64,000 nt of DNA from Auanema rhodensis (Eukaryota; Animalia; Nematoda), in NCBI GenBank assembly GCA_964057225.1, contig OZ059894.1:10540001-10604000 (forward strand), in the 5' to 3' direction. How positions within the stretch are numbered: position 1 is the first letter of the stretch; the number at the start of each line of letters is the position of its first letter. Shown one piece after another: positions 14,401 through 58,328 of this stretch. The position numbers and the translations under genes are program-made. The notes under the pieces were generated by a model. It was not told the DNA's origin. It searched no databases and worked only from the letters and a program-made list of their open reading frames with translations.

Positions 14401-15395
14401 TTCATACCTTAATTGGCATGTTCTCAATCCATAGAGCTCATTATTTCGAGCCTTGTAGTGAGAATAAAGTGTAGAAAAAAATTGTTCACCCCTTAGGCGT
14501 TATAGTTACACATTTCAATTAAAATTGTTGAAATATTATTAGAAAAATAATAATTCAACCTGTATATTAGCATTTAAGCGATTATAAGCCAATATTCCCT
14601 TTTTTTCCAAAAGAAATCTTGAAAATTAACAAATTCTTTGCTAAATTTCATTTTACTGTTAATACAGCTTTTACAGATTACATAGCAACTTGGATTGAAA
14701 TTTTCATTTGTATCATGAAATTTTGGTCTTCTTTCATCTACTATGATACCCAATTGAGACCAGTTGTTCGAACGGTAATTCTTCTTTTAGCGGTAGAAAA
14801 AGAAAAAAAGTCTTATCAACGCGGAAACTTTGAAGCATAGTTAATTAATCTTTGATAAACCATTACATTCTTAGAAAAAGATTGGTTCATGTAATTATTA
14901 CTGTCATTGCTGTAACAAAAGAAAAATAAAACCATTCTAGTAAAAATACTGAGATCCATGGCTATCAGTCATTTCATCTTTAACAAAGTTGTTTTCCCTT
15001 TTTTGTAATATTGGCATCAACGACCAATTATTTGATTCTCTTTTATTAATGATGAAGCACATTAAGAAAATATTGTTTCATAACCTTGAGAAAAAACTGA
15101 CGAATTATTATATTTTCAAAGTTTCAATGTTTGATCATCATGGAAAAAAGATTTGATACAAGCTTAGAGCAAGCAAATCAAACGGAAGGAGTGTCAATAT
15201 TTTTAAGAGCATTACAAGCTTATGAATAACCCATGCAATGAATAATATTTTCTCCAAAATAACTCCTTCGGACAAATGTCATACGATACGGTATACGTTG
15301 CGTACTCTGTTTTAGTGTTAACGTTGATAAAGCATTTTTTTTGGCTTATTGATTATACATTATTGCTGCAATTTATTCAATTATTTAAGAAAAGA

Positions 15396-15888
15396 ATGGC
15401 TTGTGCCCGAATGTTCACAGCTCTAGGTCGTGTTGGAAATGTTTTGGCAACAAAACCTATGACCAGTTTTTCTAGACCAAGTCTAATTTCAAAGAGTCAA
15501 TACTGTACCGGTAGTGAACTCATTTTTGATGTTCAGTCAGTGGATGATTTTAATGAGAAAGTAATTAACTCTCCTACTCCTGTTCTTGTAGATTTTCACG
15601 CCGACTGGTGTGGTCCATGTCGTGTGCTCGGCCCTCGCCTTGAAGAAAAGGTTTGGTAGAGCATATACCGTTTGGAAGCAAACAGAATTTCAGGTTTTGG
15701 GCCGCAATGGTGAAGTGTTAATGGCAAAGGTAAATGTTGATTATGCTGGAGAGCTCGCTATGGATTACCAAATTTCGGCTGTTCCAACTATAATCTTTTT
15801 CAAAAATGGAGAGCCATTATCACAGTTCGCTGGTGTATTAGAGGATAATGAGATCGACGAGTTCATTGATCATGCTATAAGCAATTGA
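15396..15888 (+). CDS. trx-2: Mitochondrial thioredoxin (exons 15396-15650, 15694-15888)
   Basis: Arg/Ser-rich transit-like N-terminus, [21 protein letters not shown] active site, ISAVPT cis-Pro motif. Confidence 0.93.
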
Positions 15889-16793
15889 ATGTATTATACC
15901 ATTACGAAGTATTATTGTTTTAGATTAGGATTTATTATAAAGAATAATATTATATTTGTACGTATACTTTTAAAAATATAATGGCATCATATTCGTACAA
16001 TTACCGTCATTAACTCTATTCGATTTTGAAATATTGTAGCTCAAAGAACAGAAGGACCGTTTCCGCCATACAAATTTTCCACATGCGAAGGTGGGAGCTG
16101 TAATGCAAACAAAAGAAGACATGAGTTACTAGAAGAATGAGGGCGATGATTGAGTGTGTTCGTGGTTCAACTCTGTCTCTTCTGTTCATCTTACCCTTCG
16201 TATGTGTCTAATCAGCAAATCTTACAATATTGATCTATCTCCGACATAAGCAAGGCTTGTTCCTACAGCTCAGAAGTTTTCCCTTCTGCTGCCTGATCAT
16301 GTTACGTGACTCATATCTTTAGTCTCATCAACAGCGAGTTCTAATTTACCTTCTTTCCGATAGCCTTGAAGTTCATTTGTAAGGAACTGTCCTCTTCTTT
16401 ATCGTCGCCGTCATTGAAACTCGTGTTTACCATTTACTAGCGAAAAGTAGTGCACCTTACTCATTTCCATCGATGGAATGGTTGGCCAGCAGCCATTTTA
16501 TAGTCTATTGCAGTTACTTTCCTGGTTACTTCAGACAGCCCCCGCAGCTATTCTTATCTTCTCAAATTTTTATCTTTTTAAAAAGAGCAAAAACGATTAA
16601 TGGCCATTACTTCATGGATCAATTTTTGTTTCCTTTTTTGCTATGTATTTTCTGTATTTAGCTTTTCTGAATTTTTTTAACGTTCTTTGCATATCTATAG
16701 TTTTACTTTTCTTTAAGACCTCTAAGTAGAAGAGAGGTTGTGCCAGTTGAAGATCTCTTAGTGACAGCTTCGCAGCTGTTACCACTATATGTT

Positions 16794-19700
16794 ATGTGGA
16801 AAGATCCTATGACAAATCAAAACCCTTATATAATGACTCAACACATATCGGCTCAGGTATTTTTTTAGTTTACTTATTGAATAAATTTACTCTCTTTTAG
16901 ACAAATTATGTACCCGACTCTCCAGAAGTGCAAGTCCAATTTCGGAAACGAATGCCAAACCATCGAGGTATAACATACACCATGTCAATACCCATTTTCA
17001 ATATTCAAATTAAGTTTATTTTATTCTTCTCATGTTTTCGTATTCACAGGTGCTCAAAACAATGCCGCTAACAGACATTCATATCACGGTGGGTCAAGTG
17101 TTCCTGATATGTTCTATCAAGACCACCGGTATTCACATGCTCCAGTAGTTCCGGACGCTGCTCATCGAAATGTTCGTTTCTTCCTAATTTTTTTTCTTTT
17201 TCTTTCTTTCACCATAAATTTTCAATGAAATTGCCTTCCTTCTTTGTCTTGCGGACTGTCTCCCGATGAATGCTCATCTTCCGACGAGCCCTCTTTTCAT
17301 TTTATCTATTTCAATTGCAAAGAGCGGTTGGTCTCCACTGTCATTGGCATCTCACGAGCTATTTTGGGCATGAGCATTGTTGCGAAACTATTGGCATTTC
17401 ATTCCCTTGTTAATATAATTCAAGCATTCTTCCTATGAAACATTTGTTTTCGATGTGGAAAAGATGCAGCTTTGAAAGTTTTTTGCAAACGCCGTGAAGA
17501 ATGAATAGACTCCGCTTTTCCAGCTTTCACTCCTTGTCCATCTCTTCATCCCGTCTACTCACTATATATTCAATTCTATCGATTGGCCTCTACACCGTAC
17601 ATGTACATCGCGATCGACAGCTACATACAGCCGGAGGACCAGTCCTTTCGCCTCTCAGTCATCTCATCCTATTTTCTCTTTTTCTCTTGATTGCTCCTCT
17701 CACTCAGCGAACTGAGACAAACTGACATACACTCACACAGTTCGTACAACATCACATCTCCAATTTTAAAAAAATTAATTTGAAATCTTTAAAATAATTT
17801 TATACTTCATAGAAACACTATTCATGTGATCTTTATGTTACACACTATTATACAAAACCGGTTATTTTTTGTATATCCATTTAAAACACTGACTACTTGT
17901 GGCAAGTTATTGCCAACATGTGTTTTCTATTCTTTTCATCAGCTTTATGAATGGAGAATGTTTCCGACTGTCTTATTAATCGTCATAATTATCGGTCAAA
18001 TTGTTTACGGCACATTTACTTTCTTCTTCTATCTTTGCCACCAAGTGCAGCTGTTCACTCTCGGGTGTTCTAGTCAGGTTATTGATTACTTCTTTCGATA
18101 TGTGTGGGTCCTTTTGTTGTCATTCTCAATAAGCACACACATATACATACAAACGATGAAGTAAGAACCTCGTGCGCTTCTTTTGCTTTGTGTTATTTCT
18201 CGAAACTTTACATTTTACATCAACATAGTCATCATCTGCATCATGACGCCAACCGGCGACCACACGACGAGGATAGCGACCTAACGCCTAACAACCATCG
18301 CCAACCGCCGCTGCAAGCGACATACAATCAATAATATCTAACTTTTCCTCAATCATTTACCTGTTTTTTTATTTGGAATTTATTTTCCTTTGGTTCACCA
18401 TAGTACGCTGGCGAAATGTCAAATATTAGTCTCATCATCTGCGTTATAATAGCAAACGCTCAGATTTCATTGCGGTTCTCTTCTTTCTGTCAAGCCCACC
18501 CCGACGCAAATCCTTGCTCTATATTGATCCAAACCCGCTTCGGCTTAGTCACCCAACCTATTTTCCTAAATTGGCGATTTCATATCTGGGACCGGTAGCC
18601 ATATATCATTCTCATAATTTGATTACTCGATCATATCATTTCATTTCACATTGATTTTCGTTTATTTTTTCTTTTTAGTCTTTGTTTATTCCTCGTACAC
18701 AAGACGATAGGGAGCAGGGTCGATGCAATAGACAGCGTTATTCAGGAACTTTTGGATGTTAGTTTTTCGCCTCTGTCTCATATTCAACTATAAAAAAGTT
18801 TTTTAGTGTCACTAGCTGTTTTGCCTGAGAACGGAATGAGTTCCAACGATCCTATGCTGAATAAAAAGGCTGTAGTGGATACTATGCAGCAGGTTTATTT
18901 TTATTTCTTTAGTTTATTATAATTTTATGTTCGTAGGGTCCTGATATTCATGATAGTCCTAGAGAAGGTTCAATTGTTAGCGTGGCTTCAAATAAAAGAG
19001 ATGATGCTTCTCGCGGACCTCAGCACTCTATGGTTCCTCCAGGCGGTTAGATTGTAATACATCTATCTTTGTATGCACTTCTCTTATTTCAGGGTATCCG
19101 CTACAAGGACAAGTTTTAGTTGATCCATCAACTGGGCAACATTATTTAGTACCTCAGACAGCTTTCTATCAACCTTTACAACCTATGTATTATCCACCAC
19201 CTCAACCTGCTCCTATGTATTATCCCTACAACCAAGGAATGGCTCCACCACAGCAAGGTAAACTTTGTTTTTCCATTTTGTCATAAATATTTCTATTCTA
19301 AGGTTATGTTATGCCTTCTGGAACACAAATTCCCCAGAATGGATATCCCTTGGGTGTCCAGCAACACTCTACTTATTCAAATTCACAACGCCCTATGACT
19401 GCAACTGCTCCATATCGTCATGGTTATAGTCACGGTTTTTCATCCACTGATGATGTATCACGAAGAGATCTAGATGAACGTCGTTATGGTTCGTTTGCGG
19501 TGTTTATATGTTCTTAATCTAAACATCTGTAGAAGATCATCCTCCTCCATCACCAACATTGTCAGCAGCTCCTGGAAAACAGATGTTCTCTGGTGCTCCA
19601 TATCAACCTCCTATTACTTCATTCGCTCAGCAATTCCGGTTTTTCCTTGTTTTCAATCTGTCATAATAAATTAAATTTCAGTCAAAATCACTCTTATCCC

Positions 19701-22700
19701 GTTTCGACGGTGTCTGCCGGTACTAATGGCCCAAATGCCCGTACGAGTCCCAGCAGTCAGCCAGAAGACCCCGATTGTAGTAGAGACAATTTCAGGTATT
19801 TTTTCCACAATTTATTTTAAATTGCGTTGTTTTTAGAAGAGACGTTACTCGATCAAGTGCGGAATTCGCTGCCCGATCTTCAGGGGAATTTGTTCGCCAA
19901 GGTAGTGGAAGTTTCCAATTGAATGGGGAACAAGGTCCTCGTGTACACTCTGAAAGAACACCATTATATGGAGGTCCACCACAATGGTGGGGCCGGAACG
20001 GTGACATAGGAGATTCACTGACTGATGTGGAGAGGTATTTCATGCTTATATGATGTTTCTTCAATTGATATTTGCAGCAAGCGACCGATAAATCGTTCAC
20101 CTCCAGCTCAATCTACAGCATCTGATTCTGAAGCTATGCGACCTGCACAAACTATGCTTCATTCTCCAAGAGCTCCTGCAGCTAAACCTGTTCGTATGGA
20201 CTTTGATTTTAAGAAATCAACTAATGAACCAAAGAAAGAAAAACGTAAGTTATCTTCGATTTCAAATTATTTCATTGTGCTACGCTATCCTTTTCAATCT
20301 GCATGTTGCTTATTTTCTTGCTCTTGTGAAGTGTTGTGCTATTTAGCAGCTCCTTCCCGATCTGTGCGACTAGATTTCGACTTATCCAAACCTTTACCCG
20401 AAGAAGAAGAACTCAATGAACAGAAAAAAGGTTCCCGCGTGTTGCATGTTTTCTCTCTTGTCCCTTTGAATACAGAGATTATCATCTCTTTTTCAGCTGT
20501 ACCTAGAGCTCCGGGGACTGCATTTACTGTTTCATTCGATTCACCTGGAGAAGTTTCATTGCAAGATGCTGCCAGAAGATCGGCTCAAGTAATTTGACTA
20601 TTTACTTACTTTTTATATTTTTTTTTGTTTCAGGCTCGTAGAGCTCTTGGTAGACGAACAGAAGTGGTTCAAGCTGCTAACAATACTAGAGTTGAAAGTA
20701 CGGAGCAATCGAATCAAATTCCTGCTCCCTCAACTAATAAATCTTACTTACTCAACAAATTATTAGGTTAGCTTTCAATTTTTAAATATTTAAGTAAATT
20801 GAATTGTAGGCTCGAAAGACAGTAATAATGTTGCTGGTCCTGAAATCGTTGAAAGACATGACTGTGACGCTGTAAGTGAAGCTGGAACATTCATTATTGG
20901 TTCGTCAACATCTTTTATTTTATAATCTTGTCATTGAATCGAATTATAGATATTTCTACAAGACAAGGAAATGAGCGTAATATGCCTTCTCGTATTATAG
21001 AAGATTCAGATGATAACTCAACCGATAGTGATAGCGGGTCAGTTTTTATTAGCCTATAAAAAACTGAGAAACATATTTTAGATCCAGTCGAACTGCTTCA
21101 CCTCCAAGAACAACAACTCATATGCCGGTGTCGAGTGAAAGCAATAATGAAATGTTGAGAGAACTTTGTAAGCTGCGTCAAACTGCTATCGTTAAACCCT
21201 CCACCGCCCCAGGTTAAAGACTAAGTTATTAATTTCTTATCCCCATTATTGTTTTAGCCCCCGCTGTTCCACGTACACGGTTTGGTGATGTTTCTAGACC
21301 TTTTAGTCAATCAAGTACTACTCCTTTGGCGAAAAGGACCTCTCTTGGTTCAACACCAGCTACTCCAACGCCTCCTAGTTCTAGTCGGTCTGTATATGGA
21401 CAAGTTCACTCTCCCCGAGTAACACCTTCCTCAGCCTCTTCAACTGTTTCCTCTAATGCATTCAGGTCTTTTTTGTTGCACTTCTAATTTTTATTTCTAC
21501 TTATCAAAATATTATCCCAAATCAGTTAAATCATGCTTTAAACCCATTTTTTCATAGGAAGGGTAAACGATGCCAAAGTGAAACGTACGTAAGCTATATA
21601 TGGTCGTGCGTACATCAGCATGCCAATCTTTTCTTTTCGCTCAGATTTTTTTTCGTAAAGATGTGTTGCGCAATAGAAGCTTTCCTTTGCGTGTCTTTGC
21701 CCCTTTTTTTACTAATTTGAAATTATAATATAGCTTGCATGTTATAGCGCCTTGTGATGTAATTTGTTATTTAACAGAGGATGTGTTTGAAATGAAATAA
21801 CTTTCATTTGTTTTCAGAAGAGGTGATGGGGGCAGATTCTCTATGAGAGGAACTCCTGTTGTAGGAGGTGGTTCTAGTCCTCAAACAGCTCCAAAACGCC
21901 CACCTTTCCGAGCTGGTGCAGCTCCACTAAAATCAACAGTAATATTATTCTAAGTTACTGAAAGTAATATATATCATTTAGTGCGGAAGTCTTGCTCAAC
22001 AACGAGAACAGGAAATGACTGCATGGCTTCGTCGTAAAGATTATAATCCAATGAAAGCCGCAGCTGAAGCTAAGAAACAGAAAGAACAGCAAACGAGGTA
22101 GATACCCCGAGATTAAACTCTTGTTATATGCCCATTTAGCTTAACTAATATATCACCTAATGATAGTGATTCAGATAGGTTTGTTTCATATGTCGTACTT
22201 GTCACATAGTGTACTTCATTGCATGAATTCAGCCTTGTTCCTGAAAAAAAAAAGAAAACAGATTGTAATTTTTTGTGATTTTTTATGCAACCGGTTTGGC
22301 AAAGTATTTGGAACAAAATAAAAATCGTTCATTAGCATATTGCGTTCAAAACCAATTCGTTTCATATTTTTCATTATTTTTTCTTTCAGAGGAGATCAAT
22401 TTGTTTCCAATAGATCACTATCATTTCATGTTGGGCCTAATCCTGTAAAGGCAAGATTGGTATAACTATTCCCAATATTATTTAATAAATCTGCAACATT
22501 TCAGCCTGATTATGGCGAATTAACTCGCAATCGTTCTCAAGAATCTCTTGCTGTTGAGGATGCTGAACATGTGAGTTACAGTAGAGGAGAAAAAGATATA
22601 GCCTTTTCGAAAAATGTTTTTTTTTTTCAAAGAATTTAATTTTAACAAAATTGAAAAAAAAAAACTTTTAGCATGTTGAAAACAATGTTTTTGTTTTTAG

Positions 22701-23492
22701 TCATTTATTGATTAAAAGCTGTATCAAATTATATAATCAAAATTCCTAATCATAAATACAATCTCGATACTTCGTAGCTTACTCATGAGCTTCGATTACA
22801 TCTTATTAAATAAAGAATAATGTTATCTTATTAAATATCTTACTAAATAAAGAATAATGTTTCGCGATTAAGGCAAGTCAGCAAATTGTAGCAGAGTATT
22901 CTCGTGGAGTTGTTAAGAATTTGAATAGATTATCACAACAGAGTTCAAAAGCTACTGGAAAGGTATTTCTTTATTATTGGTTCATTTTATAATATGTAAT
23001 ATTTCAGCAACTCAGCGGTTTAGAACGAGCTGTAGATATGCTATCACAAAAATGCAAAAAAAGCATAGAATTAATAAGGTTATTGCTTAATCATAAAATG
23101 ATTCTTAAACTTGTCGTAATTTCAGATCTCAAAATAAAGGATGTCTATCTGTTTCGGTAGAAGATTTGTTGGCAGCTGCTGCTGAACCTCCCCGTGATGA
23201 TGAATCTTTAAATGAACAACTGGATCGTCTTTCGAACGCTTTTGATGCTGTTCAGAGATACCTGGAACAGTACTCGCTGGACGGTCATGAATCACCAATT
23301 CCCGAATTCTCAGAAGAAGCCGAAACAAACTCTATTATTAGTGGCTTCTCTGGATTCAAGTAAGCTGAATAATAGGTTATTCTTATTAATGTAAATGCTC
23401 ATTTTAGCTTAAAATCTCACCACCTCAAAACTCCTTCTGAAGTTACATCCACTAACGACAATGACTCAGATAGGACCCAATCATATCGCTAA
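16794..23492 (+). CDS. CEP170-like low-complexity protein without an FHA domain (more than 20 exons)
   Basis: Hand-spliced exons from MWKDPMTNQNPY to DRTQSYR*. Motifs in order: TPLYGGPPQWWG, AFTVSFDSPGEVSLQD, DAVSEAGTFII, WLRRKDYNPMKAAAEAK, then a helical C-terminal region. Gene existence is well supported; family assignment is moderate. Confidence 0.7.
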
Positions 23493-24119: not shown

Positions 24120-24435
24120 ATGCCTAAGCAAATTGCTGAAATCAAGGAGTTCCTTGTTAAGGCCCGCAGAAAGGATGCCCGCTCTGTTAAGATAAAGAAG
24201 AACAAGAGCAACACCAAGTTCAAGGTTCGCTGCAGCAAGTACTTGTACACCTTGGTCGTTTCTGTGAGTTTTTAAATGCTTTTTTTCGGAATATTCTTAT
24301 TTCGAGAACATTCTCGATTGATGTTCATTCATACTTGTATTACGTGTCTAACTTTGTGTTTTATAGGACAAGGAAAAGGCTGACAAGCTCAAGCAATCTC
24401 TTCCTCCCGGCATCCAAGTCAAGGAGCTCAAGTAA
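24120..24435 (+). CDS. rpl-38: 60S ribosomal protein L38 (exons 24120-24263, 24367-24435)
   Basis: [70 protein letters not shown]; TTTTAG trans-splice-like acceptor about 10 nt before the ATG. Confidence 0.98.
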
Positions 24436-41759: not shown

Positions 41760-44700
41760 TTTATAATTAAAAATATTTATTTTTATTCACATGATCTTCT
41801 TTATTAAAAACAAATATGATAAAACCTATCAAATAATGTTTCATTTTTATCATTTATTAGATATTTTTAAAACTTTTATTATTATTTTTAAATTTTAATC
41901 TTTAATATGATATTTGAACCTATATTCGAGATTATTCTATACATACATACTATATTCAGGATATAAGAAGCTGATAATTCAATAAATTTTGATTATAATT
42001 ATACATATGTATAGTCTTGTATACGATGAAAGTGGGACACTTCTTGAAAGAGTTCAGACAACCTCCTTCAAACTTTAAAAAAAATTAATTTATGCTATGC
42101 TATGAAGTTTTTCAATACTCTTTATATATATTTTTGAGCTTTTTCGATCGTTTATTCAAACAAATACAAGAGATTTTTGGAGTTTCCCACATTCATCGAA
42201 TATTACTGTATATTATATATATAATTTTATAATTTATAAATTAAAATTATTTTTTAGCAGATTTTCTTTTTTCTTTTTTTTTATTTTATTTCATTGAAAT
42301 GAAATTGTTCTGAAATCATCATTGACAGCTTTAATGCGGATACAAAAATAAGAAGAAGAAGAAGAATTTTACAAAAAAACTTATCAGATAAGAATGATAA
42401 TACTGGTGGTTTTATTATAATTTTTTTTACTTCTTTTTAAACTTTTAATTCTAAAAGAAAATTTAAAAAGTTCAGACTAAATATTGAAATGACGCCTATT
42501 ATATCAAAAAATTTAATTTGCACTTTATCTATGGTACTGCTGCTGCTGCTGCTATCATATAATCAGATGTTTTAATATCAAATGAACAAAAAAAAAAGTT
42601 TTATATTATCATCACACATTTTTCTATTTATTTCTATGATATTATAAGAAAAAAAAAGTTCCAAAAATACTATATTTAGATAATTTTATTATATAAAATA
42701 TATAAAATTCTTTAAAAAAAAACTATTTAAATGAAATAAATAAATGTAAAACATACGAAGATTGTAGAATGACGACGATTCATAGAGGGAATCATTTTCA
42801 TTATAGATTTAGATTGTCTATATACTATTCATATAGTTACTTGGATTTAAATTTCTATCGTTTATAATTCCAAACTAGATTTCATTTCAATTTCAAATCA
42901 TATTGACTATCTTTCAATCGTTTTTTATATATTTTTCAAATAAAAAAACCTCTTGAACCTTTGAATATTAAACTAAATTACTTTAAATTATTTATATTTC
43001 AATTTTTTTATTAAAAAAATATTTTTTTTCTTCAAAAAAAAAAGAAAAAACTATTTCGGTACTGTACGTAATTCATAACTTTTCATCTTTATTAACTGAA
43101 GAAAATTAATCGGAGAAATCATCAGTTCTTATCATCAATGGGAAATCATTTCAATAGTTCTTTCTCTTATCTCAGATGAATATTTCTTTTTTAAAATAAA
43201 ATAATCCATAGATCTTTAGAGAAAATTATTATTTTTATTTTAAATTTTAATTATAAATTTTTTTATATTTTTATTGTTTATTTTTCTTTTTTTTTATATT
43301 TTTTTGTTTGTTTTAGATTTTAGGAAATATATTGAAATTTATTATATAATTATATTTATATTCTAATAATTCTTTATATTTATCTAATGATAAACAAGTT
43401 TAAATTTTGATTTTTCTTTAAAATTAGCATATTCATTGTACGGAACCATTTGCCGTTCACGTGGATTTCACGTCTCAGCTGTTATCATTTCATTTGGAAC
43501 GGGTACAAGCTCGGCTGTGTATGTGTGTGATGTAACCAGGAAAATACAAAAAACATTAAATCACAAAAGAAAATTGAAAATGCTTGAAAAAAAAAACATT
43601 TTTTTCTTCTCTTTACTACTGTTTATTTAAAAATTTTATTTGTTTTTTAATTCAAATATTATTCTTTATTATATTATTATGGGAAACAATAAGCTCTCAA
43701 TCTATCAAAGATTATAATAATATAATTCTTTATTTGAAATAAAAACGTTTAGAACAACAGTTATATCATAACGATACACATAACCAGCATACAAGCATAT
43801 TTTGATATTTCCTATTTAGAATTTAAGAATAATAAAATATAATTTGAAGGAAAATAAGAAGAAAATAAGAAAAAGTTGATAATTACTATATGAATTGAAT
43901 AAGTGATTTCAAATATTACGTATAGTCATTTCTTATCAATTATAACAATGAATTGATTATTGGAACTATTAAGTTGCTTCATAATCATTTTTCTTTGAAT
44001 AATTTGATTAAAATAGGAATAGTGTATGCTAATAATACTATATATATTATATATATTGTATATTATATATATAGTTATAATTTTATAATTTATTTTATTA
44101 TATAAAAAACTTTTTTGATCTTTTAATTTCGTTTGTAAAATCTTTTCTTAAAAACTTTTTAAAGATATATAAAAAAAAAAGATTATCGAGTTACAAGAGA
44201 GCCGGAAGGATGAAGGTATTCCTCGTTCATTTGGCCATTTATCTTTCTTTTTTCTTCCACAGAACTGAAAAACGCAAAAACTGATTCACGAAATCATTGT
44301 AATATCAGACAACTGTTCGTGGCTCGAAGACGTGATGATCGCAAAATATCTGCAAATAATGAAAATTCATTTGCACCCACGATCATCACGACCTTTATCC
44401 GGAAGGATATCCCTGCCTACTCTTTGAAAATACTTACAAAATTCAAAAATTGTTATTAAACTTTACAATTTCTGATGTTCCATCATATTCGTCCTACACA
44501 GTTATTAGACTGTTGAACTAACCCTAATGTCCCGTTTTTCTCTCATTCTCTGTCGCTAAAATTCGTTTTCGCTAAAACAATTTTTTTGTATTTTCCGGAA
44601 ATTTGAACCTCGCAACGTTGATAAAATCTTTTTTTGGCCTTAAATCTCTTTTGTAAAGGCTTTGCGTAGTTTGACCGGATGTTCTTGGTACTGAATAGTC

Positions 44701-45026
44701 AGTTTGAGCACCTGTATTGACGTCGTCACCAGTGGAATTGTCGACACTGTATGTACTTTTCGACGTCGTCGTACGTCAGCAATACTAGATGGTCTAGAAG
44801 CAAATAAAGAAGGCAACATTTCTCTTTTTTTATTCATCTTCTTTCGTATTTATTCCTACGTTCCGCATACTCTTCATCATCTTTTGACTTTATCATCTCT
44901 TTCTCTTTAACTCATCTCGTTATCAACTCTTATATCTTTTTATACTTTTAGAATCTATATTCATTGTTTTTCCTCATTTCCGCTATCACTTGGAATTTTG
45001 CTTGAGCTTTGCACCTAACTCCAAGT

Positions 45027-45039
45027 TCTCTCTCTCTCT

Positions 45040-45082
<43 letters not shown>
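45027..45082. repeat. (CT)n microsatellite, one interruption
   Basis: Read directly; similar tracts at ~37735-37775 and ~45409-45440. Confidence 0.9.
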
Positions 45083-45085
<3 letters not shown>

Positions 45086-45406
45086 ATCCTCTACTGTTTT
45101 CCCTCATCTCCTAAGTTTGATCTCATTGAACAGTATATGAATATCCCTCATTTCTTCATTTAACACTTTTCTCTCAATTGAAAGCAAAACCGTATTATTA
45201 GAATGAAAATCATAATCATCTCTTAAGCTAAATGTCCTTTTTTTGATTAAAAATCACATTTTCTCTTTGTAACTGATCAGGTCACTGAGCAGATTATATT
45301 TGAAAAAAGAAAAAGATGAGAAAAGCTATTCAAAAGGTTTTCAAACTTTCTTCACACTTCAACACTAATTCTTGAACTCTGATTATTTGGTTTAAATCTA
45401 ATTATT

Positions 45407-45443
<37 letters not shown>

Positions 45444-48400
45444 GTCATTTGTCTTTAAACCTTAGAATCTCTTTGCTCTGAACTTTTCTTTCTACATTCC
45501 GCTTATTTCCGTCGACTATTTCAATACTTTTGTAAAGTTTTAAGTAAAAATAAAATAAAATAAACAGAGAAGTTCCAGAAAAACAAAGACAACAAACATA
45601 TTGCAGCTGCTTTTTTTTAATTTAAAACTTAGTAACAATGTTGTCAAATTCCTCATTTAAAGCTAAAATTGGCAACTTTTCTTCGTCTTCTATATCATTT
45701 CCGGGATTTTTCGATTGTCTCCAAACTCACTATATAATATGCAATCAACTGATAGATAATACGTTGAAAAAACCATGTGATCTAATAATCTATTCTGATT
45801 GTAGAGGTTCTAATGATTTTTGAGTCAAAGACTTTTTGCAATTTTATGATTTACAACTATCATTCTCTTTGTCTTTTCTCTTTTAATCTATTAGAAAACT
45901 ATAACCTTTCAATATCATTACTACCTTTCTATCATCAAATCATTTAATTTTCTTTCATTTTTAGTCAAAAAATGGTTTTATTGTTACTGTTTTCTCACTC
46001 ATGATAGATGATTCATGTGAAGCTAACGATATGAGGCATCATCATCAACCCTACAACCACCCAACCACAAAACCATCCAACCACCCACACATCATAATCA
46101 AATACATGATTGTCATAATCTATTTAATCTTATAAATTACATTTAAACAACATTTCATAAACTTCATAAAGCTTTTTCACTTTTTAAAAAGTATCCAAGT
46201 AATTCAAATGAATAGCACCCAGTTTCTGAGACCAACTACGTCAACTAGATTATTTCATTGCGAACGTACGAACGTTACATCTTCCGGTTTTCCGGTCAAT
46301 GTCTCTTTTCTTCTGTTTCTTTCTCCCTCCTTCTCTTTCTCTCTCCCTCTCTTCTTCGTTTTCCATCTATTCATCTTCTCTCTTTTACATCATCTTGTGT
46401 TGTACAAGAGATGATGAAAAAGACCTTTTTTTTGCTTTATCTTCATGTGAACTCTACATATAAAATATTTTTCATATATAATACAAACAATAATATTCAA
46501 TTTTTATTTATTTTTGTGGCTTTTTTTCACATTACCCTACCTCCTCCTCCCCCTCCTCCTCACACTTCAAATAGCTTACAATAATTAAAAATTGATGATC
46601 ATATGATATATCAATCACATGTTATACTTAATAATCTTTAATAATAGGAAAAGATTGATTTTACATATTCGTGGATATATACTTATACCGAGAATCTGAG
46701 TATCTCTTCTAATTGTTTTCGATAATTTAAACTTTTTTTTAAAAATACGCAATTACGTCTAATGTTAGGAGGGGGGGGGGGGGGAGTAATGTGAAGAAGT
46801 AAAGAAGAGCCATTTTTGTTTTATTCAATGTTTTCTGATCAAATCTTTCTCTCCTTTGCAACTTCATACTACCCACGCTTCCATCTTGTTCTCCCTACCT
46901 CACCCCCCCCCCAACCTCTTCTAGACCTCATCCTTACTTGCACTTTCCTTTTTCCAATTTTTTATTGTTTATGTTTCTCTCACTTCTCTAAAATTCCTCC
47001 AACTTTTTCTTTTTTTTCCTATTTCGATGTCAGTCATCATTTTCCTTCTCTTTATTCATTTCTGTATTTCGTATACATGTGTCTTTGAGAACAAGACTGA
47101 CTATATATGAAATCAGAACCCACTTAAGCAAACTTTTCTTTCTTCTCTATTATTTTTTTATTTTTAATTTATAATATTATATAAATTATAAATTATTTCT
47201 ATTTTATCTTATTTCATCTTTTTTTTTATTTCATTTTAGTTTAATCCTACAAATCATACATACATTCATTCAAACGTACATACAATACATAGCTAAAACG
47301 GAAAAAAAAATAGAAAAGTTGTAAACAAATTTCTTTTAAATCAAAAATTAGTTTTCTATACATTAAATATAGTTTTATAAATATCAGATATTTGAATTAC
47401 AAACCTCATAGGTCAGATGAAATGCTGAATCATCACATTCATTTCTTCATACTATTTTCTTTTTTCCATCCTCCTTCGAATGCTCCTCCTTTTCCTCTCT
47501 CACTATTACTCTTTGCCCCTTTCTCTCCGTCTCTCTCTCTCTCTCTCTTTCTACCTTTTACTACTTCTCTCTCTCTCTTTTTGAAACTCGAAAAACAAAT
47601 TTTTAACTTAAAAAACAAATAAGGCCTTCTGATTGTTTTGACTTTTTATATACTTTTGATGAGATATAATCTCACCTTTCACCTATTATTCATTTAATTT
47701 CTGATATAATAAAGGGTAAACAGATCTGTATGGACGTTTTATAACCATTTAGAGGTTAAAAAGATGATATCAAGTTGAAAATATGACATCATATTCAAAC
47801 ATTATATCGCACAAAACCAACTTTTTTTCAATTTCTAATACTATAAGCCAATATCAGCTGATTATTTTTATATTCACAATCCTTTTTTTCGTTTGTATGT
47901 ATATTCTTTGAAAATAGCCAAAACCGCACTCAACAACAATTCCCAAACCTTATACATGGTTCGGACAAGCAAATGTTTGCAAAAGTCATATACAGCAAGC
48001 TTGTAAGCCCGTTTGCAACGTTTCAATTTTAGTGAAAAGTTGGGGGAAAAAACGTTTCACTTTGTCAATGTTCTCTCTCAATCTCTCCTATTTTCTCTCT
48101 CTAATGATTTTTTTCTTTTTATAGTTGATAGTTTCATTTGTATCGTTCAATGTATGAATTTCATTTGGCCTATGTATGTATTTTCTTTTTTCTTATCTAT
48201 CACCTCTTCCCTCTCTCTTTCTCTCTCTTTCTCTCGCACGCTCTATCTCTCTCTCACTTTCTCTTCAGCGATTCTTTTCTCTCCTGTTCAAGCTTATCCA
48301 TGTTTTCAGCTATTTATTAACTATACGATATACTTTTTAAAATCATAATCGTTTAATCCCTTTTTCCGGAAAAAAATTAGCAATTCGTCATATCCAGCCA

Positions 48401-51400
48401 TTGTATTCTGATTATTGATCAACAATTTTCGAAAATGTCTACGAAAGTTAATGCAGTTGAACCCTTTTTACAAGTAATAATCATATTCTTCATTGCTTAA
48501 CATCATCTGATGACAAAGATGATTTTTGCCCTTCGTGCGTGAAAGTGGACTTACATACGTCAACTCAACTCTCACGTGGTTTTACAACAACCAATGGTCA
48601 CTTTGCAGCAACGTCAATCGGTTGTTTCATAGTTTATTTTGTCTTTTTTTTCAAATTTAATTCTTAAATTTCATTATATATTTTATATGAAAATCAATTA
48701 TAATATTAAAGAATTATATTTATATTTTATAATTTTTTGAATGATGTTCTCGCAACATCGTCGTGAAAATATTTTTTTGCGTCCAAAATAAGTTAAAACT
48801 ACTATAATCCGTAGTTGTGATCATAGATTATGTTCACGCTTTAGTTGAAAAATCTCTATCAATTCATACATATGGGTCATGTTTCACCTTCGTGCAAATC
48901 TGTATTTTCAATTCAATTCTATGTTCGAGCAGATTTTCGTATTCTTTTAAAATCTGATTGGCTTAATTTCATTAACACCTCGTGAATTACTTTGTTTCTC
49001 CCTCAAAGCACAGCTTAAATAGTTTACGAACAAAGTAAATTCCTTTGAACGGAACTGGTTGTTTTCATGATTTCGTCATCTGCTTCTGGTTATGAAATCG
49101 GATGACTGTAAAGAACTCTTGATATTCTGACGAATTTTGACTGTTTTGGTAACGTCTGAAGGGTAATCTCTCTATTCTCTCGCCTCACATTTCCCCTCAT
49201 TTTCCGGGCATGTATGTATGTGGCAGCAAGATCATGTCAATATTGACAGTAGTCACTTAGTTCCTCTCGTTCTTCTGATGCTCCTATAATACTACCCTAC
49301 AATTTCCCTCCTTCCCTCGTTTTTCCCTCTCTCTCTTTCTCTGTATCTTCGTACCCTTTTCTCATCTTACTCATCCCCCTCCTACTCCTCCTCGTCATTC
49401 GATGTTCTCTCTATCTTTTCTGATTTCTCTCAGTTTTTTCTTTACTTCTTCAACTAAATGGAATGAAAGGCAATTTTTGAGACTTTAGGCGGCACTGGAT
49501 AAAGAGAAACAGACTGTTGCACTTTGCACTTTCTCTATTCTCTGCATTCTCATCGAATTCTTTTGTGTTTTTCCTCTTCTTGCCTTCATTCAGAGTCAAA
49601 TCATTTAGAGAAAGAATAGGAATAAGAGAGAAAAAGATGAAAAAATGACATGTGGTACCATTGGCTTAGTGCCAGAACATACTGTTTCTTTAATCTTAGA
49701 CCACATTGCACGATTATATGACTATGGCAATAACCTCGTTCATGCTCCTGAAGTCATGTAGTTTTATGCTTCACGTGAACATTTTCTTTATCTCATTTTC
49801 GTTCAGGAGAAGACATAGAAAGGAGTAGAAAAACCAGATTATTGTATTCTCTTTTATCTATTCTGAATGACTATTACTTAACTATTCTTCTAACATTATG
49901 GATTGATTGTTTAGACTTCTCTTGGTCACATGTATATATGCCAATAATCCTGAAGAAAAGCCTCTTCATTCTTATTTCTTATCAACATCATCATCACCTT
50001 TCTCTTTCTTATTTTTCCCTCTCTTTATTTCTCTCTCATTCACATTCTCACTAGTAACAAGGGGATACAAACAAAATCAGCAGGTCGTTCCTTCCACCAA
50101 AGAGCGCTGACTTCCTGATGGCAACACTGTCATCGACAGAAAAGTCTATGATCACGTGGTGCAATTAGAATTTTTTTGGAAAAAATATTATCTTCTCTAT
50201 CTTGTCTATTCAATTATAGTTTCGTTTATTGAAATTTAATTTACAATTACATTGCAAATACTGTTCTTTTGTGCTGATTATTAATAGAAACATGACTGTA
50301 GTAACAGTATTTATTTTCTAATTTTCGCTGTTTCATTGTTTGAATTTGGAGTTTAAACCATGTCATAGAGTTCATGAGTTCTGCAATCTGATCAGGTTAA
50401 CATATGAACTTCAAGTGGCTAGCTAATACATCAAGATTATAATCTCATCTCTCAAGCATTTCAATCCTCTTCCTACTTCCTCACTCCAAACGATCAAAAT
50501 CACAAATCGTTGTTTAATTCTTCAGAATCTTATAATGGAACTTTAGGTTATGCTCAGCAATGAGTATTTGCACTTAAAGCTCCAGAACTACACTTGTCTT
50601 CACATTTTTTCTTTACTTCTCTTAAGTTTTGACACGCTTTTAACATTACATCATCATCGTGCCAGTCTGTCTCCTTACTAACATCTATTAATTCGATCTC
50701 TGCTCCTAATTTGTCAAGACAACCATCTTTCTCTTTATCTCTCTCACTCAATTCTACCCTCTCTCTATGATACTTTCTTTCGTATACACCTTATACCCAA
50801 AGTTGCACATCTTACACACGTATCATCAGGAAGTCTAGATGGCGTTGTTGCTAATTCTACTTGTCTTTTCCTCTTCTTTCGTCTATTTTCAAATCTTTCT
50901 CATTTCATTCTCGAGAGTTCCACCCTGTTCTTCTGTCCTTCATTCTCTCACATGAAAGCTTCTGATCCACCACGTGTTCTATACCCGATCGTATTTCCTT
51001 TTAAAGTGTTTCCTACACTTATCGCCTCATTAGCTCATTTGATGATTGTCATTGTTTATAGAAGAAGGACTGAACGACATCTGAGCTTCAAATACACAAC
51101 CGATGTGACATCTTCAAGTCACATGCTGCTTCATTTTATGCTCCGTTCCCTCAGGAAGCTTCATAAGTTGTTATGAAATTGTGAAACCTAAGCTGGACAA
51201 CCTATATCTCTACAACTTTGTTTTCTTTCATATTACTTACACTAAATATTGTCTTTATCCTGTCATATTTGAATTTTCCAGCTTAAAAATAATCATTTAT
51301 CATCAACAACGTTTTATTTTTTGAACTTTTTAAGCTTGCGTTCCTTCCTATTTTTTATTTGAAAAAACTTGAAAAAAATGACAACAGTAGGCGGAAAATT

Positions 51401-54400
51401 TGGCTTCGAAATGCCAAATGATTTATGCCAAAGGTCGCAGAACAACTTGTTCCTCTTTCTTTTTCTTGGGACACATTTCAAAAACTTTTTATTACTATCC
51501 AAATTATAATATTGTTTAAATTGTTTTAATTATTTAAATTATTAAATATTATTATAATTTAAAATAATATTTGTTGTTGATCTGTGAACTTTAATCCTTT
51601 TTTTGGCAAAAACCGATTTTTTTTTTGTTTTTGGTTTCCGACAATAGTATCTCCAATATTTCTTCTATTTCTTCTTAATATTCAATCAAAATCTATCATT
51701 TACTTCTCTTCATGATTATCAATTTTAAGTTTCACGTGATTCTTAAACGTGGATTTATTAATTTGAATATTCAATTAATTCTTTTCTCTTCTTCTTCTTC
51801 TTCTTCTTCTTCATATGGTGCCAATAAGTTTCCATATAATCAGTTTCCAATTAGCTATATCACTTTAACACCTAAGGCGAGTCAAGTTATAGGACAGGCG
51901 AGAAGTGCTTGACAGGCTGGACTGGCTTGGCACTCTCCCAAACGACCTTCTACAAGGTCAGCACCGTCTGGCACCAGCTGCCCAGTCAACTCCGCCCAAA
52001 CTTCGTTGAACCATCGTCGGTTCTTGTCGTTGTGTCTCTTTTTTAGTTTTTGTCGTCTGAATCAGTTTGCAACAATATAATAGATATTTTCTAATTCTAT
52101 AAATTTATAAAGAAGATTAAGAATTATTTATCTGATGGTATTATATTGAATGGGTATAATATATATATATTTATTTATATATAATAAAATATAAAAAGAA
52201 AATTTTAAAAAATAGTTAAAAGAGACTTGAAATGTGATGAAATGAAAATGGGTAGTAGATGGTGTAAGAAGAATTAGTTGATTACCTGATAATGTAGATT
52301 CTTGATCATTCTTCCTATTATCATCTCTTATTTCCTCTCTTTCTCTCTCTCTTTCTCTCTCTTTTCTCTTCTTTTTTTACTTCTTTTCCTTATTTCTTCT
52401 TTTTAATTTTTCATGACAAATCAACGTCTGAAAGAGAGCGGGAAAAAAATTAAAAACATTGCCCAAATGCATTATATGCATGAAAGAGAGTAGGTTGACA
52501 ACTTGAGCTTTCTATTACATTCACTGATATTCAGTTTTCTCTTATTCTTTTGATAATTTTGGTTATTCATTGTTTCTCTTCTTATGCTTGTCTCGCCACG
52601 ACATCTTAGATTGTCTCCCACATTTTCTTCAAAAATCTATATTTCCCGAATGTTTTCTCTAAACGTTAAAATCTTTTCTTCGTAAGGGATGGTCTGTCTT
52701 TTCTTTCTATCTAGTTTGCATCCATACCGTCATCAATGTCTCTCAAAGATTGCGAAATTCTTTGATTTAGCCTGAGAAATACGAGAGATCATATAAACCT
52801 AAGAGGGAAAGAGAGTACGAACACGAACCTGAGGTTAAGTAGAGTTAGAAGAGACAGATAAGGTTTAAGAGAAACATACAACTGTTCAATTTGCCTCCAA
52901 TTCGAAAATGATTGTTTGTTGTTACATCAAACATTACACGAATTTTCATTTGTGTACAATTCATTTATCATTACTATCTATTACTCAATTTTACATGTTT
53001 CATAATTAAATTATAAAAATTAAAAAAACTTATATCATATCATTCTATTCTCCGTATTAATTTCATTTACATAGTCGTTTTTTTTTCAAAAATCATGAGT
53101 GCAAAGATACAATGGTCAAACGATGATACTTGATCTTCTCTATGATCTAATACAAAGTTCGTATAAATTAGCATAATCAGCATACTCTATACTCTATATG
53201 TATAGTTAATACAACTGTATTCATATGTTAGTTCTTTTCGTATATCATTTCATATTCTGTTTCTTGCCATATTTGTAAAAATTCCCAATAATACTGAACC
53301 TTCCCCGGATATCCGGCCTTCCATGATTTCGATATTCAAAAAAAAATCTTTGTCTAAACAGCTTTATTTGAAAATTTTATTTGAAAAGCTTTCTGTACTA
53401 TTCGGATATTTGCCCTTTATGTGTTGATCTGATGATTTTAATCTAAATACTATAACAGATATATAACACCAATATCCAGCGATTTCTTGAAAACATTTTG
53501 AACTTTCTTCTCTTTTTCTCTCTCTCTTTATCTTTCCATCTCTCTCTCTTCCTTTCTCTCTTTCTATTTTTTTATTTTATATTCTTGTTAGTATACACTC
53601 AATTTGCTTTACCTTCTTTTTCCTTTTCTATCTCAAAGCTCATTTCTTGCTCATATCCTTTACTCTCTTTCCTTCTCCCTCTCCCTCTCCCTCTCTCTCT
53701 CTCTCTCTCTTCCAATTTCATTTTTTTCTTCTTTAGCAGTCATTGGTAGCAGCCAGCTCTTAAATGAGCGCATCGTCTGTCCTCATGAATTATGGAAAAT
53801 GCCATCATGCGCTCTTAACCCGTATGACCTCTCAGCTTTTAGTCCTTAGGCTATATACATTGTATCTTGATGTCTGTTCTTTTCTTTTCTGATAAAAGAT
53901 CACACTGATCTCAAATTATCTTTGAACATATCAAATTTTGAAGTTAGTTCGGAACTTGCAGCAGCAGACATCGCAAATTTCTGAGAACAAATGTCCTCAT
54001 TATATGAACCAAAAGTCAGAGCAAACGTCAGTTGCCCCCCAGCATTGTCTGCCTTTTTCATGATTTGTCAACTCTTTATACTAACTTGTTCAACTACCTA
54101 ATAGGACCATTTCTCTTGTTTTGTCTTTATTTTTCTTCTCTCATGTTTACTATTTTACTTTATTCCTAAGTATATTTCTTTCGTAAAATCTGTTTCTTTT
54201 CAATTTTATATGCTTAATTAAGGTTTTTATGATTCCCACTTGAAATTTAAACTTTATTTCTAATAGTTAAGTCGTAAGGAATGTTTTCTTTTTCATTATC
54301 CTCATCTTCCTCACATCATCATCATCATCATCATATGCTCAAGTTTTCTGACAAGTTGAAACATCTTTATAATTTATTTTTGAACCATATGTACTATACA

Positions 54401-54857
54401 TATATATAATATATGATAGACATATTAAATCTTATTTCATATCTTATTCCTTTCTTTATATTTACATTGAAAATTGAATTAATACAAATATAAAAAATAC
54501 ATTAGAGAAATGATGTAATACTTATTTCATTTCATTTATTCATTATATTCTTTTTTTCTTTTTTTTTGTATAGATTGCAATAGTGTTTTTTCTACACAAC
54601 TCCCCCCCCCCCAAACCCCTTAATAGGGTTGCCCACATCTGGAGTCTCTGAGCTCTTTTAGATGGGTTCCGAGGTTCCTCTCACCGTCCTCTTTTTTCAT
54701 GCATGAGACGAAATGAAGACAGAAAAATAGAGGAAGAGGTAGGATAGATGGAAGAAAAATGTGAAGTGCTCTCTTTCAAATTCTAACTTTTTTTTTAATT
54801 TACTGTTCATTCATTAAAAGAATTATTATTTGTTATTGTAAATAGAACATTGAAAAT

Positions 54858-54884
54858 GCCACGTGAGCCACGTGAGCCACGTGA
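54858..54884. promoter_or_regulatory. Three tandem GCCACGTGA E-boxes
   Basis: Perfect 9-bp x3 repeat, each with CACGTG, ~4.9 kb upstream of ATG 59794. Confidence 0.6.
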
Positions 54885-57800: not shown

Positions 57801-58006
57801 ATTATTCTTCATATCTAATAGGGAATATTTAATCATTTGCTTTAATTACTACGATTTTTCATATTTAGTATTGAACAAAGTTGCGTCAACTTGCATTTTC
57901 GTGTTCTAACTCATTCAGAAACGAACAGGTGTGAATTCTACTCACATATGCCTTTTGATCGCCCTTTTTAATCATTTTTTTCCTTTTATTTACTAAAATC
58001 AAAGAG

Positions 58007-58010
<4 letters not shown>

Positions 58011-58060
<50 letters not shown>
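58011..58060. repeat. (AG)25 microsatellite
   Basis: Read directly. Confidence 0.92.
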
Positions 58061-58064
<4 letters not shown>

Positions 58065-58182
58065 TGAAGAGAAAAAGAATATCACCGCTACTAGGCTTCT
58101 ATGACAATCATCGTGTAAACAAGCATGTGGTTAGTCTGCAAAAAAAAACTATCAAACAGATATAGAGAATTACTGAAGAATA

Positions 58183-58232
58183 TTACTTCCGTATTTTAAT
58201 CTTTATTCCTATTTATAAATTATTTCCTTATA

Positions 58233-58276
<44 letters not shown>

Positions 58277-58328
58277 TATATAAGGAAATAATTTATAAAT
58301 AGGAATAAAGATTAAAATACGGAAGTAA
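58183..58328. repeat. Near-perfect 146-bp palindrome centred on (TA)n
   Basis: TTACTTCCGTATTTTAATCTTTATTCCTATTTATAAATTATTTCCTTATA-(TC)n(TA)n(GA)n-TATAAGGAAATAATTTATAAATAGGAATAAAGATTAAAATACGGAAGTAA. Confidence 0.92.

What the first reader, a model, noticed from the sequence alone, without database searches (positions are those of the whole stretch)
16794..23492. Candidate nematode CEP170 homologue that has lost its FHA domain
Seen: three motifs in order, TPLYGGPPQWWG (19958-19993), AFTVSFDSPGEVSLQD (20520-20567) and DAVSEAGTFII (20866-20898), then WLRRKDYNPMKAAAEAK (22024-22074). As recalled, human CEP170 has TPLYGQPSWWG, ASFTIEFDDSTPGKVTIRD and DDQSDKGTYTIE in the same order just after its FHA domain. 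Here the N-terminus is Pro/Gln/Tyr-rich with VLVDPSTGQHYLVP instead. CEP170 is a subdistal-appendage and microtubule protein, and nematode centrioles are described as lacking such appendages. Inference: a divergent orthologue with a non-centriolar or ciliary microtubule role that standard orthology calls could miss. I cannot confirm whether it is already annotated.
Basis: partly seen in the sequence, partly recalled or inferred. Interest (0 to 1): 0.75.

Follow-up and report, generated by a model that had tools for sequence, protein, structure and literature searches.

The report
FHA-less nematode CEP170-family gene
This expressed 27-exon nematode gene most likely descends from the centrosome and microtubule protein CEP170 but has lost its phosphopeptide-binding FHA domain, which gives worms, C. 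elegans F53C11.5 included, a previously unnamed CEP170 relative to study.

Summary
All four motifs are at the stated coordinates, inside one + strand gene: 27 exons, 16794-23492, 1046 codons. The gene is spliced and transcribed in four runs of one study, and it is single-copy.

Orthologues exist from Plectus through Spirurina, Strongyloides, Pristionchus and Caenorhabditis (C. elegans F53C11.5). All are labelled hypothetical or carry inconsistent automatic names, and none has a Pfam domain.

The key result is the Plectus sambesii orthologue. It is homologous over its whole length (hhalign E 1.5e-81) and keeps an N-terminal FHA domain. The best solved match to that domain is human CEP170 (4JON, E 1.5e-12; next best 1.2e-6).

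No rhabditid member has an FHA domain, and neither the window nor its genome has a CEP170-type one. RNA contigs start about 70 nt before the ATG, with no upstream exon.

Weak points:
- Pfam CEP170_C never matches.
- No tool supplied a CEP170 sequence beyond the FHA domain, so the human motifs remain recalled, not tested.

The parts
16794..23492 (+). Coding span of the gene, ATG to TAA: 27 exons, 3141 nt, 1046 codons. Introns are mostly 41-50 nt, with larger ones of 66 to 1507 nt.
   Evidence: Exon table with GT..AG and no in-frame stops. Colinear tblastn of P0001. Spliced RNA contigs. Single copy in the genome.
16720..16793 (+). 5' untranslated leader. The RNA contigs begin here, next to AG acceptors at 16716-17, 16725-26 and 16728-29 (possible trans-splice sites). 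There is no ATG before 16794.
   Evidence: Contig lengths and pieces, and no loose 5' end. Sequence. The contig start is computed from record offsets and is approximate.
16794..18757 (+). Exons 1-4 (16794-16856, 16901-16967, 17050-17171, 18679-18757). This is an N-terminal extension containing NRHSYHGG. It occupies the position where the Plectus orthologue has its FHA domain and is not recognisable as FHA.
   Evidence: Alignment A1. hhalign against P0060. No FHA hit at E<=10.
18807..19045 (+). Exons 5-6: the MSSNDP...DSPREGS block. In Plectus this block directly follows the FHA domain.
   Evidence: hhalign of P0060 against A1. RNA joints.
19113..19154 (+). VLVDPSTGQHYLVP motif in the Pro/Gln/Tyr-rich exon 7 (19093-19257).
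   Evidence: Conserved in all 21 species. Weak sub-threshold Pfam DUF4585 hits on this motif in four orthologues.
19958..19993 (+). Motif 1, TPLYGGPPQWWG, in exon 11 (19837-20034).
   Evidence: Conserved as (R)TPL[YF]G..P.WWG from Plectus (GRTPLFGQPPSWWGEDE) to strongylids.
20190..20384 (+). Two tandem VR[ML]DFD[FL] motifs: 20190-20210 in exon 12 and 20364-20384 in exon 13.
20520..20567 (+). Motif 2, AFTVSFDSPGEVSLQD, in exon 14 (20497-20588). It is followed by a short predicted helix, LQDAARRSAQARR.
   Evidence: T, F, T, L, Q and A are invariant in A2. Helix at 139-153 of the A2 model.
20745..20765 (+). YLLNKLL motif, a short predicted helix, in exon 15.
20866..20898 (+). Motif 3, DAVSEAGTFII, in exon 16 (20810-20899). 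It is followed by an acidic Ser-rich patch in exon 17 (20950-21037).
21082..22459 (+). Exons 18-22: a basic region (net charge about +20), rich in Ser/Thr/Pro in exons 18-20. It contains RGDGGRFSMR (21819-21848), KRPPFRAG and WLRRKDYNPMKAAAEAK (22024-22074). It is the inferred microtubule-lattice-binding part.
   Evidence: Charge table.. Invariant columns of A3. The function is inference.
22873..23359 (+). Exons 24-26: the C-terminal helical domain (AEYSRGVV, MLSQKCKKSIELIR, SVEDLL, AFDAVQRYLEQ). It is the most conserved part of the family.
   Evidence: A3. The AlphaFold2 model has helices at 123-154, 159-186, 193-202 and 212-235, with pLDDT 62-80.

Best explanation
The gene encodes a 1046-residue, mostly disordered protein. 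It is the rhabditid-nematode descendant of the CEP170/CEP170B family. The ancestral N-terminal FHA domain is still present in the Plectus orthologue. It was lost on the branch leading to Rhabditida, and in Rhabditina an unrelated short extension takes its place.

The conserved parts are:
- a series of short linear motifs in a disordered region (TPLYG..WWG, VRMDFDF twice, AFTVxFD-LQDAAR, YLLNKLL, SEAGTYVVD);
- a basic Ser/Thr/Pro-rich stretch;
- a C-terminal helical domain.

By analogy with CEP170 and CEP170B, the protein is inferred to bind microtubules through its basic region and C-terminal part, and to recruit partners through the short motifs. Kinesin-13 (KLP-7 in worms) is the obvious candidate partner. 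It would do this without the phosphopeptide-dependent docking that an FHA domain provides, and so probably away from subdistal appendages: at spindle poles, non-centrosomal minus ends or the ciliary base.

Shown here: the gene structure, expression, motif conservation, absence of FHA, and the Plectus link to the CEP170 FHA. Inferred: microtubule binding, the partner, and the site of action.
For: - Gene model and transcription.
- Family from Plectus to Caenorhabditis with all blocks in the same order.
- Plectus P0060 is homologous to the rhabditid profile over residues 59-915 (hhalign probability 100, E 1.5e-81).
- P0060 has a Pfam FHA domain at residues 29-96 (E 1.8e-16).
- The best solved match to P0060 is the human CEP170 FHA, 4JON_A. 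It scores E 1.5e-12 and 50 bits and starts at residue 5 of the chain, as the FHA does in Plectus. The next hits are bacterial at 1.2e-6, and other eukaryotic FHA domains score 0.03 or worse.
- A second Plectus entry, P0051, also joins the end of the FHA to the same downstream sequence.
- No FHA domain in more than 20 rhabditid members scanned, in the window, or as a CEP170-type domain elsewhere in the genome.
[quoted passage not shown] The motif region is disordered and the C-terminus is helical.
That is memory, not a tool result.
Against: - Pfam CEP170_C (PF15308) matches no exon, none of about 30 orthologues (not even Plectus), and nothing in the genome.
- Profile and single-sequence searches of the large protein databases returned only nematodes. 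The word-based tool cannot reach relatives that share fewer than a few 5-mers, so that blank is weak evidence.
- The link to CEP170 rests on one genus (Plectus) and on predicted gene models from a single source.
- No CEP170 sequence beyond the FHA domain was available, so similarity outside the FHA domain is untested.
- No functional data exist. No paper in the library mentions F53C11.5.
Confidence: 0.8

Rival explanations
1. This is a nematode-specific disordered protein unrelated to CEP170. On this view, the Plectus FHA is a gene-model fusion or an independent domain gain, and the motif resemblance to human CEP170 is chance among short motifs.
For: No Pfam CEP170_C hit anywhere. Only nematodes appear in all database searches. 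The human motifs are recalled only. The Plectus locus could not be fetched to inspect the gene model.
Against: Two Plectus entries join the FHA to the same downstream sequence. The FHA sits at the extreme N-terminus, as in CEP170, and matches CEP170 about 20 bits better than any other solved FHA. The block right after the FHA aligns with the rhabditid MSSNDSL...DSPR block.
Confidence: 0.1
2. This is a descendant of a different FHA protein family (not CEP170) that lost its FHA in Rhabditida.
For: FHA domains are widespread and the solved set is incomplete, so the best solved match need not be the true orthologue.
Against: The solved set holds many human FHA proteins, yet only CEP170 scores below 1e-6. 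The N-terminal placement, long disordered middle and C-terminal helical end all fit CEP170/CEP170B.
Confidence: 0.05
3. This is a CEP170 orthologue that still has an FHA domain, encoded by an unrecognised upstream exon or used from an alternative promoter.
For: The reading frame is open from 16701 to the ATG, and AG acceptors lie at 16716-16729. An upstream exon could therefore join in frame. Contigs cannot prove a 5' end.
Against: The contigs of all four runs start at the same place with no loose end. Only about 800 bp separate this start from the thioredoxin gene. There is no FHA signal in the window or on this contig near the gene, and no CEP170-type FHA anywhere in the genome. The Auanema model starts at the same MWKDPM, and three curated C. 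elegans isoforms lack FHA.
Confidence: 0.03

Closest known systems
Human CEP170 (centrosomal protein of 170 kDa; FHA structure 4JON)
   Same: The Plectus orthologue of this gene has an N-terminal FHA domain closest to that of CEP170 (E 1.5e-12). The overall plan is the same: a long disordered middle with short conserved motifs, a basic region and a helical C-terminal end. By recollection only, the same three post-FHA motifs occur in the same order.
   Different: The window gene has no FHA domain and no Pfam CEP170_C match. It is about 540 residues shorter than the human length as I recall it, and it has a Pro/Gln/Tyr-rich N-terminal part with a VLVDPxTGQHY motif. In humans, centrosome targeting runs through C-terminal binding to CCDC120, CCDC68 and taxilin (PMC13019896). 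Whether nematodes have those partners was not examined.
Human CEP170B (KIAA0284, Cep170R), the microtubule minus-end regulator that works with KIF2A
   Same: [quoted passage not shown] Its N-terminal part is minus-end specific and its C-terminal part binds the lattice (PMC12731735). The disordered-motif plus helical-end layout predicted here fits that description.
   Different: FHA is absent. Minus-end binding and kinesin-13 recruitment are untested in nematodes.
Plectus sambesii A0A914W7Z5 (P0060), labelled 'FHA domain-containing protein'
   Same: It is a full-length homologue with every motif block in the same order (hhalign E 1.5e-81).
   Different: It keeps the FHA domain (residues 29-96) and lacks the rhabditine NRHSYHGG extension. 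The KCKKSIELI block is divergent.
C. elegans F53C11.5 (NP_001041120-22; Q93763, Q1HAZ9)
   Same: It is an orthologue (E 6e-44 to the C-terminal region). It has no FHA and no Pfam domain, and it keeps motif 2, motif 3, WLRRKDYNPMK and the C-terminal helices.
   Different: It is shorter (830-891 aa) and has lost motif 1 (TPLYG..WWG) and the RGDGG block. It carries only automatic names ('Zf-C3H1' and 'USP domain-containing'). No paper in the library mentions it.

Membership tests
CEP170 family (CEP170/CEP170B) | N-terminal FHA domain (Pfam PF00498) | tested here: not met
   There is no FHA in the window exons, in P0001 or in more than 20 rhabditid orthologues. There is none in the window or on this contig, and no upstream exon in the RNA contigs. 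The feature is met in the Plectus orthologue P0060 (E 1.8e-16). The absence is the finding itself.
CEP170 family (CEP170/CEP170B) | Pfam CEP170_C (PF15308) match | tested here: not met
   No hit at E<=1 on the window exons, at E<=10 on the 13 members of A1, or on 21 further orthologues including Plectus. A six-frame genome search found no candidate. The model covers a largely disordered region, so a miss at this divergence is weak evidence against descent. By this domain criterion, however, the gene is not a member.
CEP170 family (CEP170/CEP170B) | Descent from a CEP170-type ancestor, shown by an intermediate that is homologous to both | tested here: met
   P0060 is homologous to the rhabditid profile over 794 columns (E 1.5e-81). 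Its FHA domain is closest to human CEP170 4JON_A (E 1.5e-12, against 1.2e-6 for the next hit).
CEP170 family (CEP170/CEP170B) | Post-FHA motifs shared with vertebrate CEP170 (TPLYGQPSWWG, SFTIEFDD.., GTYTIE) | not testable with these tools
   The nematode side is confirmed. No tool returned a vertebrate CEP170 beyond residue 127, and the motif strings occur in no paper of the library. The human side is recollection only.
CEP170 family (CEP170/CEP170B) | Long disordered middle plus C-terminal helical or coiled-coil domain | tested here: met
   The A2 model has mean pLDDT 51 with only two short helices. The A3 model has four helices with pLDDT 62-80. This matches the description in PMC12731735.
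CEP170 family (CEP170/CEP170B) | Microtubule binding, kinesin-13 binding and centriole or minus-end localisation | not testable with these tools
   Only the composition could be examined: exons 18-22 have a net charge of about +20.
Pfam DUF4585 (PF15232) | Match above the curated cut-off (27 bits) | tested here: not met
   There are recurrent 14-15 bit hits (E 0.03-0.055) on the LVDPxTGQHY motif in four orthologues, all far below the cut-off. It is a lead only.

The most novel reading that the evidence does not exclude
Rhabditid nematodes, whose centrioles are described as lacking subdistal appendages, keep an FHA-less CEP170 (F53C11.5 in C. elegans). It would act on microtubule minus ends together with kinesin-13 KLP-7, opposing Patronin/PTRN-1. 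That would mean minus-end regulation, not appendage building, is the ancestral core function of the family, and that the FHA domain is a dispensable docking add-on lost when its phospho-partners disappeared.
Probability: 0.25. Interest if true: 0.75.

Novelty: new variant of a known kind. Interest (0 to 1): 0.62.

Why it matters
CEP170 and CEP170B are studied almost only in vertebrate cells. They mark mature centrioles, bind microtubules and partner with kinesin-13 depolymerases.

Nematodes are a main genetic model for centrosomes, cilia and non-centrosomal microtubule arrays. In the sources seen here, the worm gene is unnamed, has no domain annotation and appears in no paper of the library.

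Recognising it would have three consequences:
- It gives a tractable knockout and tagging target.
- It provides a natural 'FHA deletion' experiment, showing which CEP170 parts evolution keeps once the FHA is gone: the short motifs and the C-terminal helices.
- It dates the loss to the stem of Rhabditida, after Plectus split off.

C. elegans itself has also lost the TPLYG..WWG motif. A less derived species may therefore be the better model for that motif.

Tried and rejected
1. Pfam CEP170_C on the exons, about 30 orthologues and the genome: no hit.

2. Large protein searches:
- The representative library with the stop-free stretch 20079-20588 gave 6 hits, all nematode.
- The word-indexed database with P0001, with profile A1 and with the C-terminal region of P0008 returned only nematodes.
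- These blanks do not show absence. The word index needs several shared 5-mers and scores only the top 8000 candidates.

3. ESM Atlas, with the whole of P0001 and with P0060 lacking its FHA: no usable feature hit, and the structure rows were meaningless (TM<0.2).

4. Profile A1 against the solved structures: nothing.

5. Foldseek of the C-terminal model against PDB: only generic helical bundles, E>0.1.

6. Attempts to verify the recalled human motifs in papers or supplements: none found. The EMBO J paper on CEP170B is not held.

7. Fetching the Plectus locus: not on record.

8. Looking for a CEP170-type FHA elsewhere in the genome: the Plectus FHA finds nothing, and eight Pfam-FHA loci show at most 25 bits to it.

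9. Considered and dropped: exons 1-4 as a degenerate FHA remnant. hhalign extends into them at low to middling confidence only, and the FHA model does not hit them.

10. The automatic UniRef names (SUZ, MIF4G, bHLH, USP, Zf-C3H1) are mutually inconsistent and unsupported by Pfam.

11. Complex prediction was not used. No spliced kinesin-13 sequence of this genome was at hand.

Full report
**Observation**

VLVDPSTGQHYLVP lies at 19113-19154, in an exon that is 57% Pro+Gln+Tyr.

The window is AT-rich eukaryotic DNA with very short introns. I built an exon table by eye and checked it exon by exon. It has 27 exons from 16794 to 23492, totalling 3141 nt. All introns are GT..AG, and there are no in-frame stops.

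The flanking genes are a thioredoxin (15276-15888, +) and ribosomal protein L38 (from 24120, +).

**Expression and the 5' end**

Four runs of one study hold spliced contigs that are 100% identical to the window. Twenty-three joints were reported, and the 15 listed are all GT..AG and match the exon table. Coverage of 0.41-0.44 of the sampled words fits the exonic share of the stretch.

The runs are only guessed to be RNA, but a spliced form is hard to explain otherwise.

The contigs begin at about 16720-16730, next to three AG acceptors. No loose 5' end is seen, and there is no ATG before 16794. The frame is open back to 16701, so contigs alone cannot exclude an upstream exon. The other evidence against one is given under 'Absence of FHA' below.

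**Family**

The stop-free stretch 20079-20588 (three exons read through two in-frame introns) found six proteins in the representative library. All are from nematodes. The best is an unnamed 1043-aa protein of Auanema sp. JU1783, P0001, at 86% identity. P0001 maps colinearly over the whole gene.

Word-indexed searches with P0001, with the 13-sequence profile A1 and with the C-terminal region of the Nippostrongylus orthologue gave 40-odd members. These include:
- strongylids, Auanema, Mesorhabditis, Diploscapter, Pristionchus and Panagrolaimus;
- Strongyloides, ascarids and filariae;
- Caenorhabditis (C. elegans F53C11.5, three isoforms of 830-891 aa);
- Plectus.

All are labelled hypothetical, or carry mutually inconsistent automatic names. 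None has a precomputed Pfam domain. No paper in the library mentions F53C11.5. The gene is single-copy in this genome.

Fourteen sequence blocks occur in the same order in 21 species. Motif 1 is lost in C. elegans, C. briggsae and Strongyloides, and it is degenerate in Pristionchus fissidentatus, Panagrolaimus and Mesorhabditis. P. pacificus still fits the loose motif 1 pattern, although its TPLYG part is degenerate.

**Link to CEP170**

Direct tests failed. Pfam CEP170_C matches nothing, and no database search left the nematodes.

The decisive result came from a cluster look-up. The Plectus sambesii orthologue has a longer sibling entry, P0060 (943 aa), named 'FHA domain-containing protein'.
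- P0060 has a Pfam FHA domain at residues 29-96 (E 1.8e-16).
- It aligns with the rhabditid profile over residues 59-915 (hhalign probability 100, E 1.5e-81).
- Against all solved structures, its best match is the FHA domain of human CEP170 (4JON_A, E 1.5e-12, 50 bits), aligned from residue 5 of the chain.
- The next matches are bacterial FHA proteins at 1.2e-6. Other eukaryotic FHA domains score 0.03 or worse.

The truncated entry P0051 also runs from the end of the FHA domain into the same downstream sequence.

Plectus carries GRTPLFGQPPSWWGEDE, ATAFTVTFDSEKETLSLQDAARKS and DTLSDAGTYVIDNEE. That remains a recollection, because no tool or paper supplied the human sequence.

**Absence of FHA**

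- No FHA was found in more than 20 rhabditid members.
- The Pfam FHA model finds nine sites in this genome, none on this contig.
- The Plectus FHA finds nothing in the genome and nothing near the gene in the window.
- Eight of the genome's FHA loci resemble it only generically, at 25 bits or less.

Together with the RNA contigs and the 800-bp gap to the upstream gene, this makes a hidden FHA exon unlikely. Because Plectus branches outside Rhabditida, the simplest reading is a single loss on the rhabditid stem. Rhabditina then gained a short extension (NRHSYHGG, exons 1-4) in its place.

**How it probably works**

AlphaFold2 with a 21-sequence alignment predicts the motif region as disordered (mean pLDDT 51, pTM 0.16). 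The exceptions are two short helices at LQDAARRSAQARR and YLLNKLL. The C-terminal 115 residues are predicted as four helices at pLDDT 62-80, with no specific structural neighbour.

Exons 18-22 carry a net charge of about +20, and exons 18-20 are rich in Ser/Thr/Pro. An acidic Ser-rich patch follows motif 3.

Published work describes the following:
- CEP170 has two microtubule-binding segments in its C-terminal half, and it binds Kif2b (PMC3521686).
- Its centrosome targeting runs through the C-terminal region (PMC13019896).
[quoted passage not shown] Its N-terminal part is minus-end specific and its C-terminal part binds the lattice (PMC12731735).

The nematode protein keeps that layout minus the FHA. 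I therefore infer a microtubule-associated scaffold that recruits partners, most plausibly kinesin-13, through its short motifs. None of this was tested.

**Verdict**

By Pfam domain criteria the gene is not a CEP170 member. By descent it very probably is (0.8).

It is a new variant of a known kind. Interest is moderate to high because it gives worm genetics an unnamed CEP170 relative and a natural FHA deletion.

The joined protein model was never sent to a search tool.

Noticed in passing
window 22097-22390: The RNA contigs of runs X1 and X4 show two donors, at 22097 and 22178, joined to the same exon that starts at 22390. Using 22178 would read one codon and then a TAG. That gives a truncated product lacking the C-terminal roughly 210 residues, or a decay target.
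   Followed up: partly
window 21436-21842: Low-depth contigs (8-16, against 30-100 for the exons) run unspliced across the 352-nt intron 19. This may be intron retention or pre-mRNA.
   Followed up: no
window 19113-19154; P0004 68-97, P0038 120-153, P0034 65-98, P0040 85-118: The LVDPxTGQHY[IL]VP motif gives recurrent sub-threshold hits to Pfam DUF4585 (E 0.03-0.055, 14-15 bits). It is conserved from Plectus to Caenorhabditis. I do not recall it in vertebrate CEP170.
   Followed up: partly
P0048, P0054 (C. elegans), P0035 (C. briggsae), P0052 (Strongyloides): These orthologues have lost the TPLYG..WWG motif. C. elegans and C. briggsae have also lost the RGDGG block. C. elegans is therefore a reduced representative of the family.
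   Followed up: yes
window 17172-18678: Intron 3 is 1507 nt in a gene whose other introns are mostly 41-50 nt. It holds a 112-codon open frame (17826-18164, +) and has zero RNA depth.
   Followed up: no
window 15276-15888 (+) and 24120-24275 (+): The neighbouring genes are a thioredoxin with WCGPC, possibly with a mitochondrial presequence, and ribosomal protein L38.
   Followed up: no
window 44000-62000: Strong negative GC and AT skew suggests a long gene or genes on the minus strand. A weak FHA-like tblastn hit (E 0.1) lies at 50904-51014 on the minus strand. Open frames there were uninformative.
   Followed up: partly
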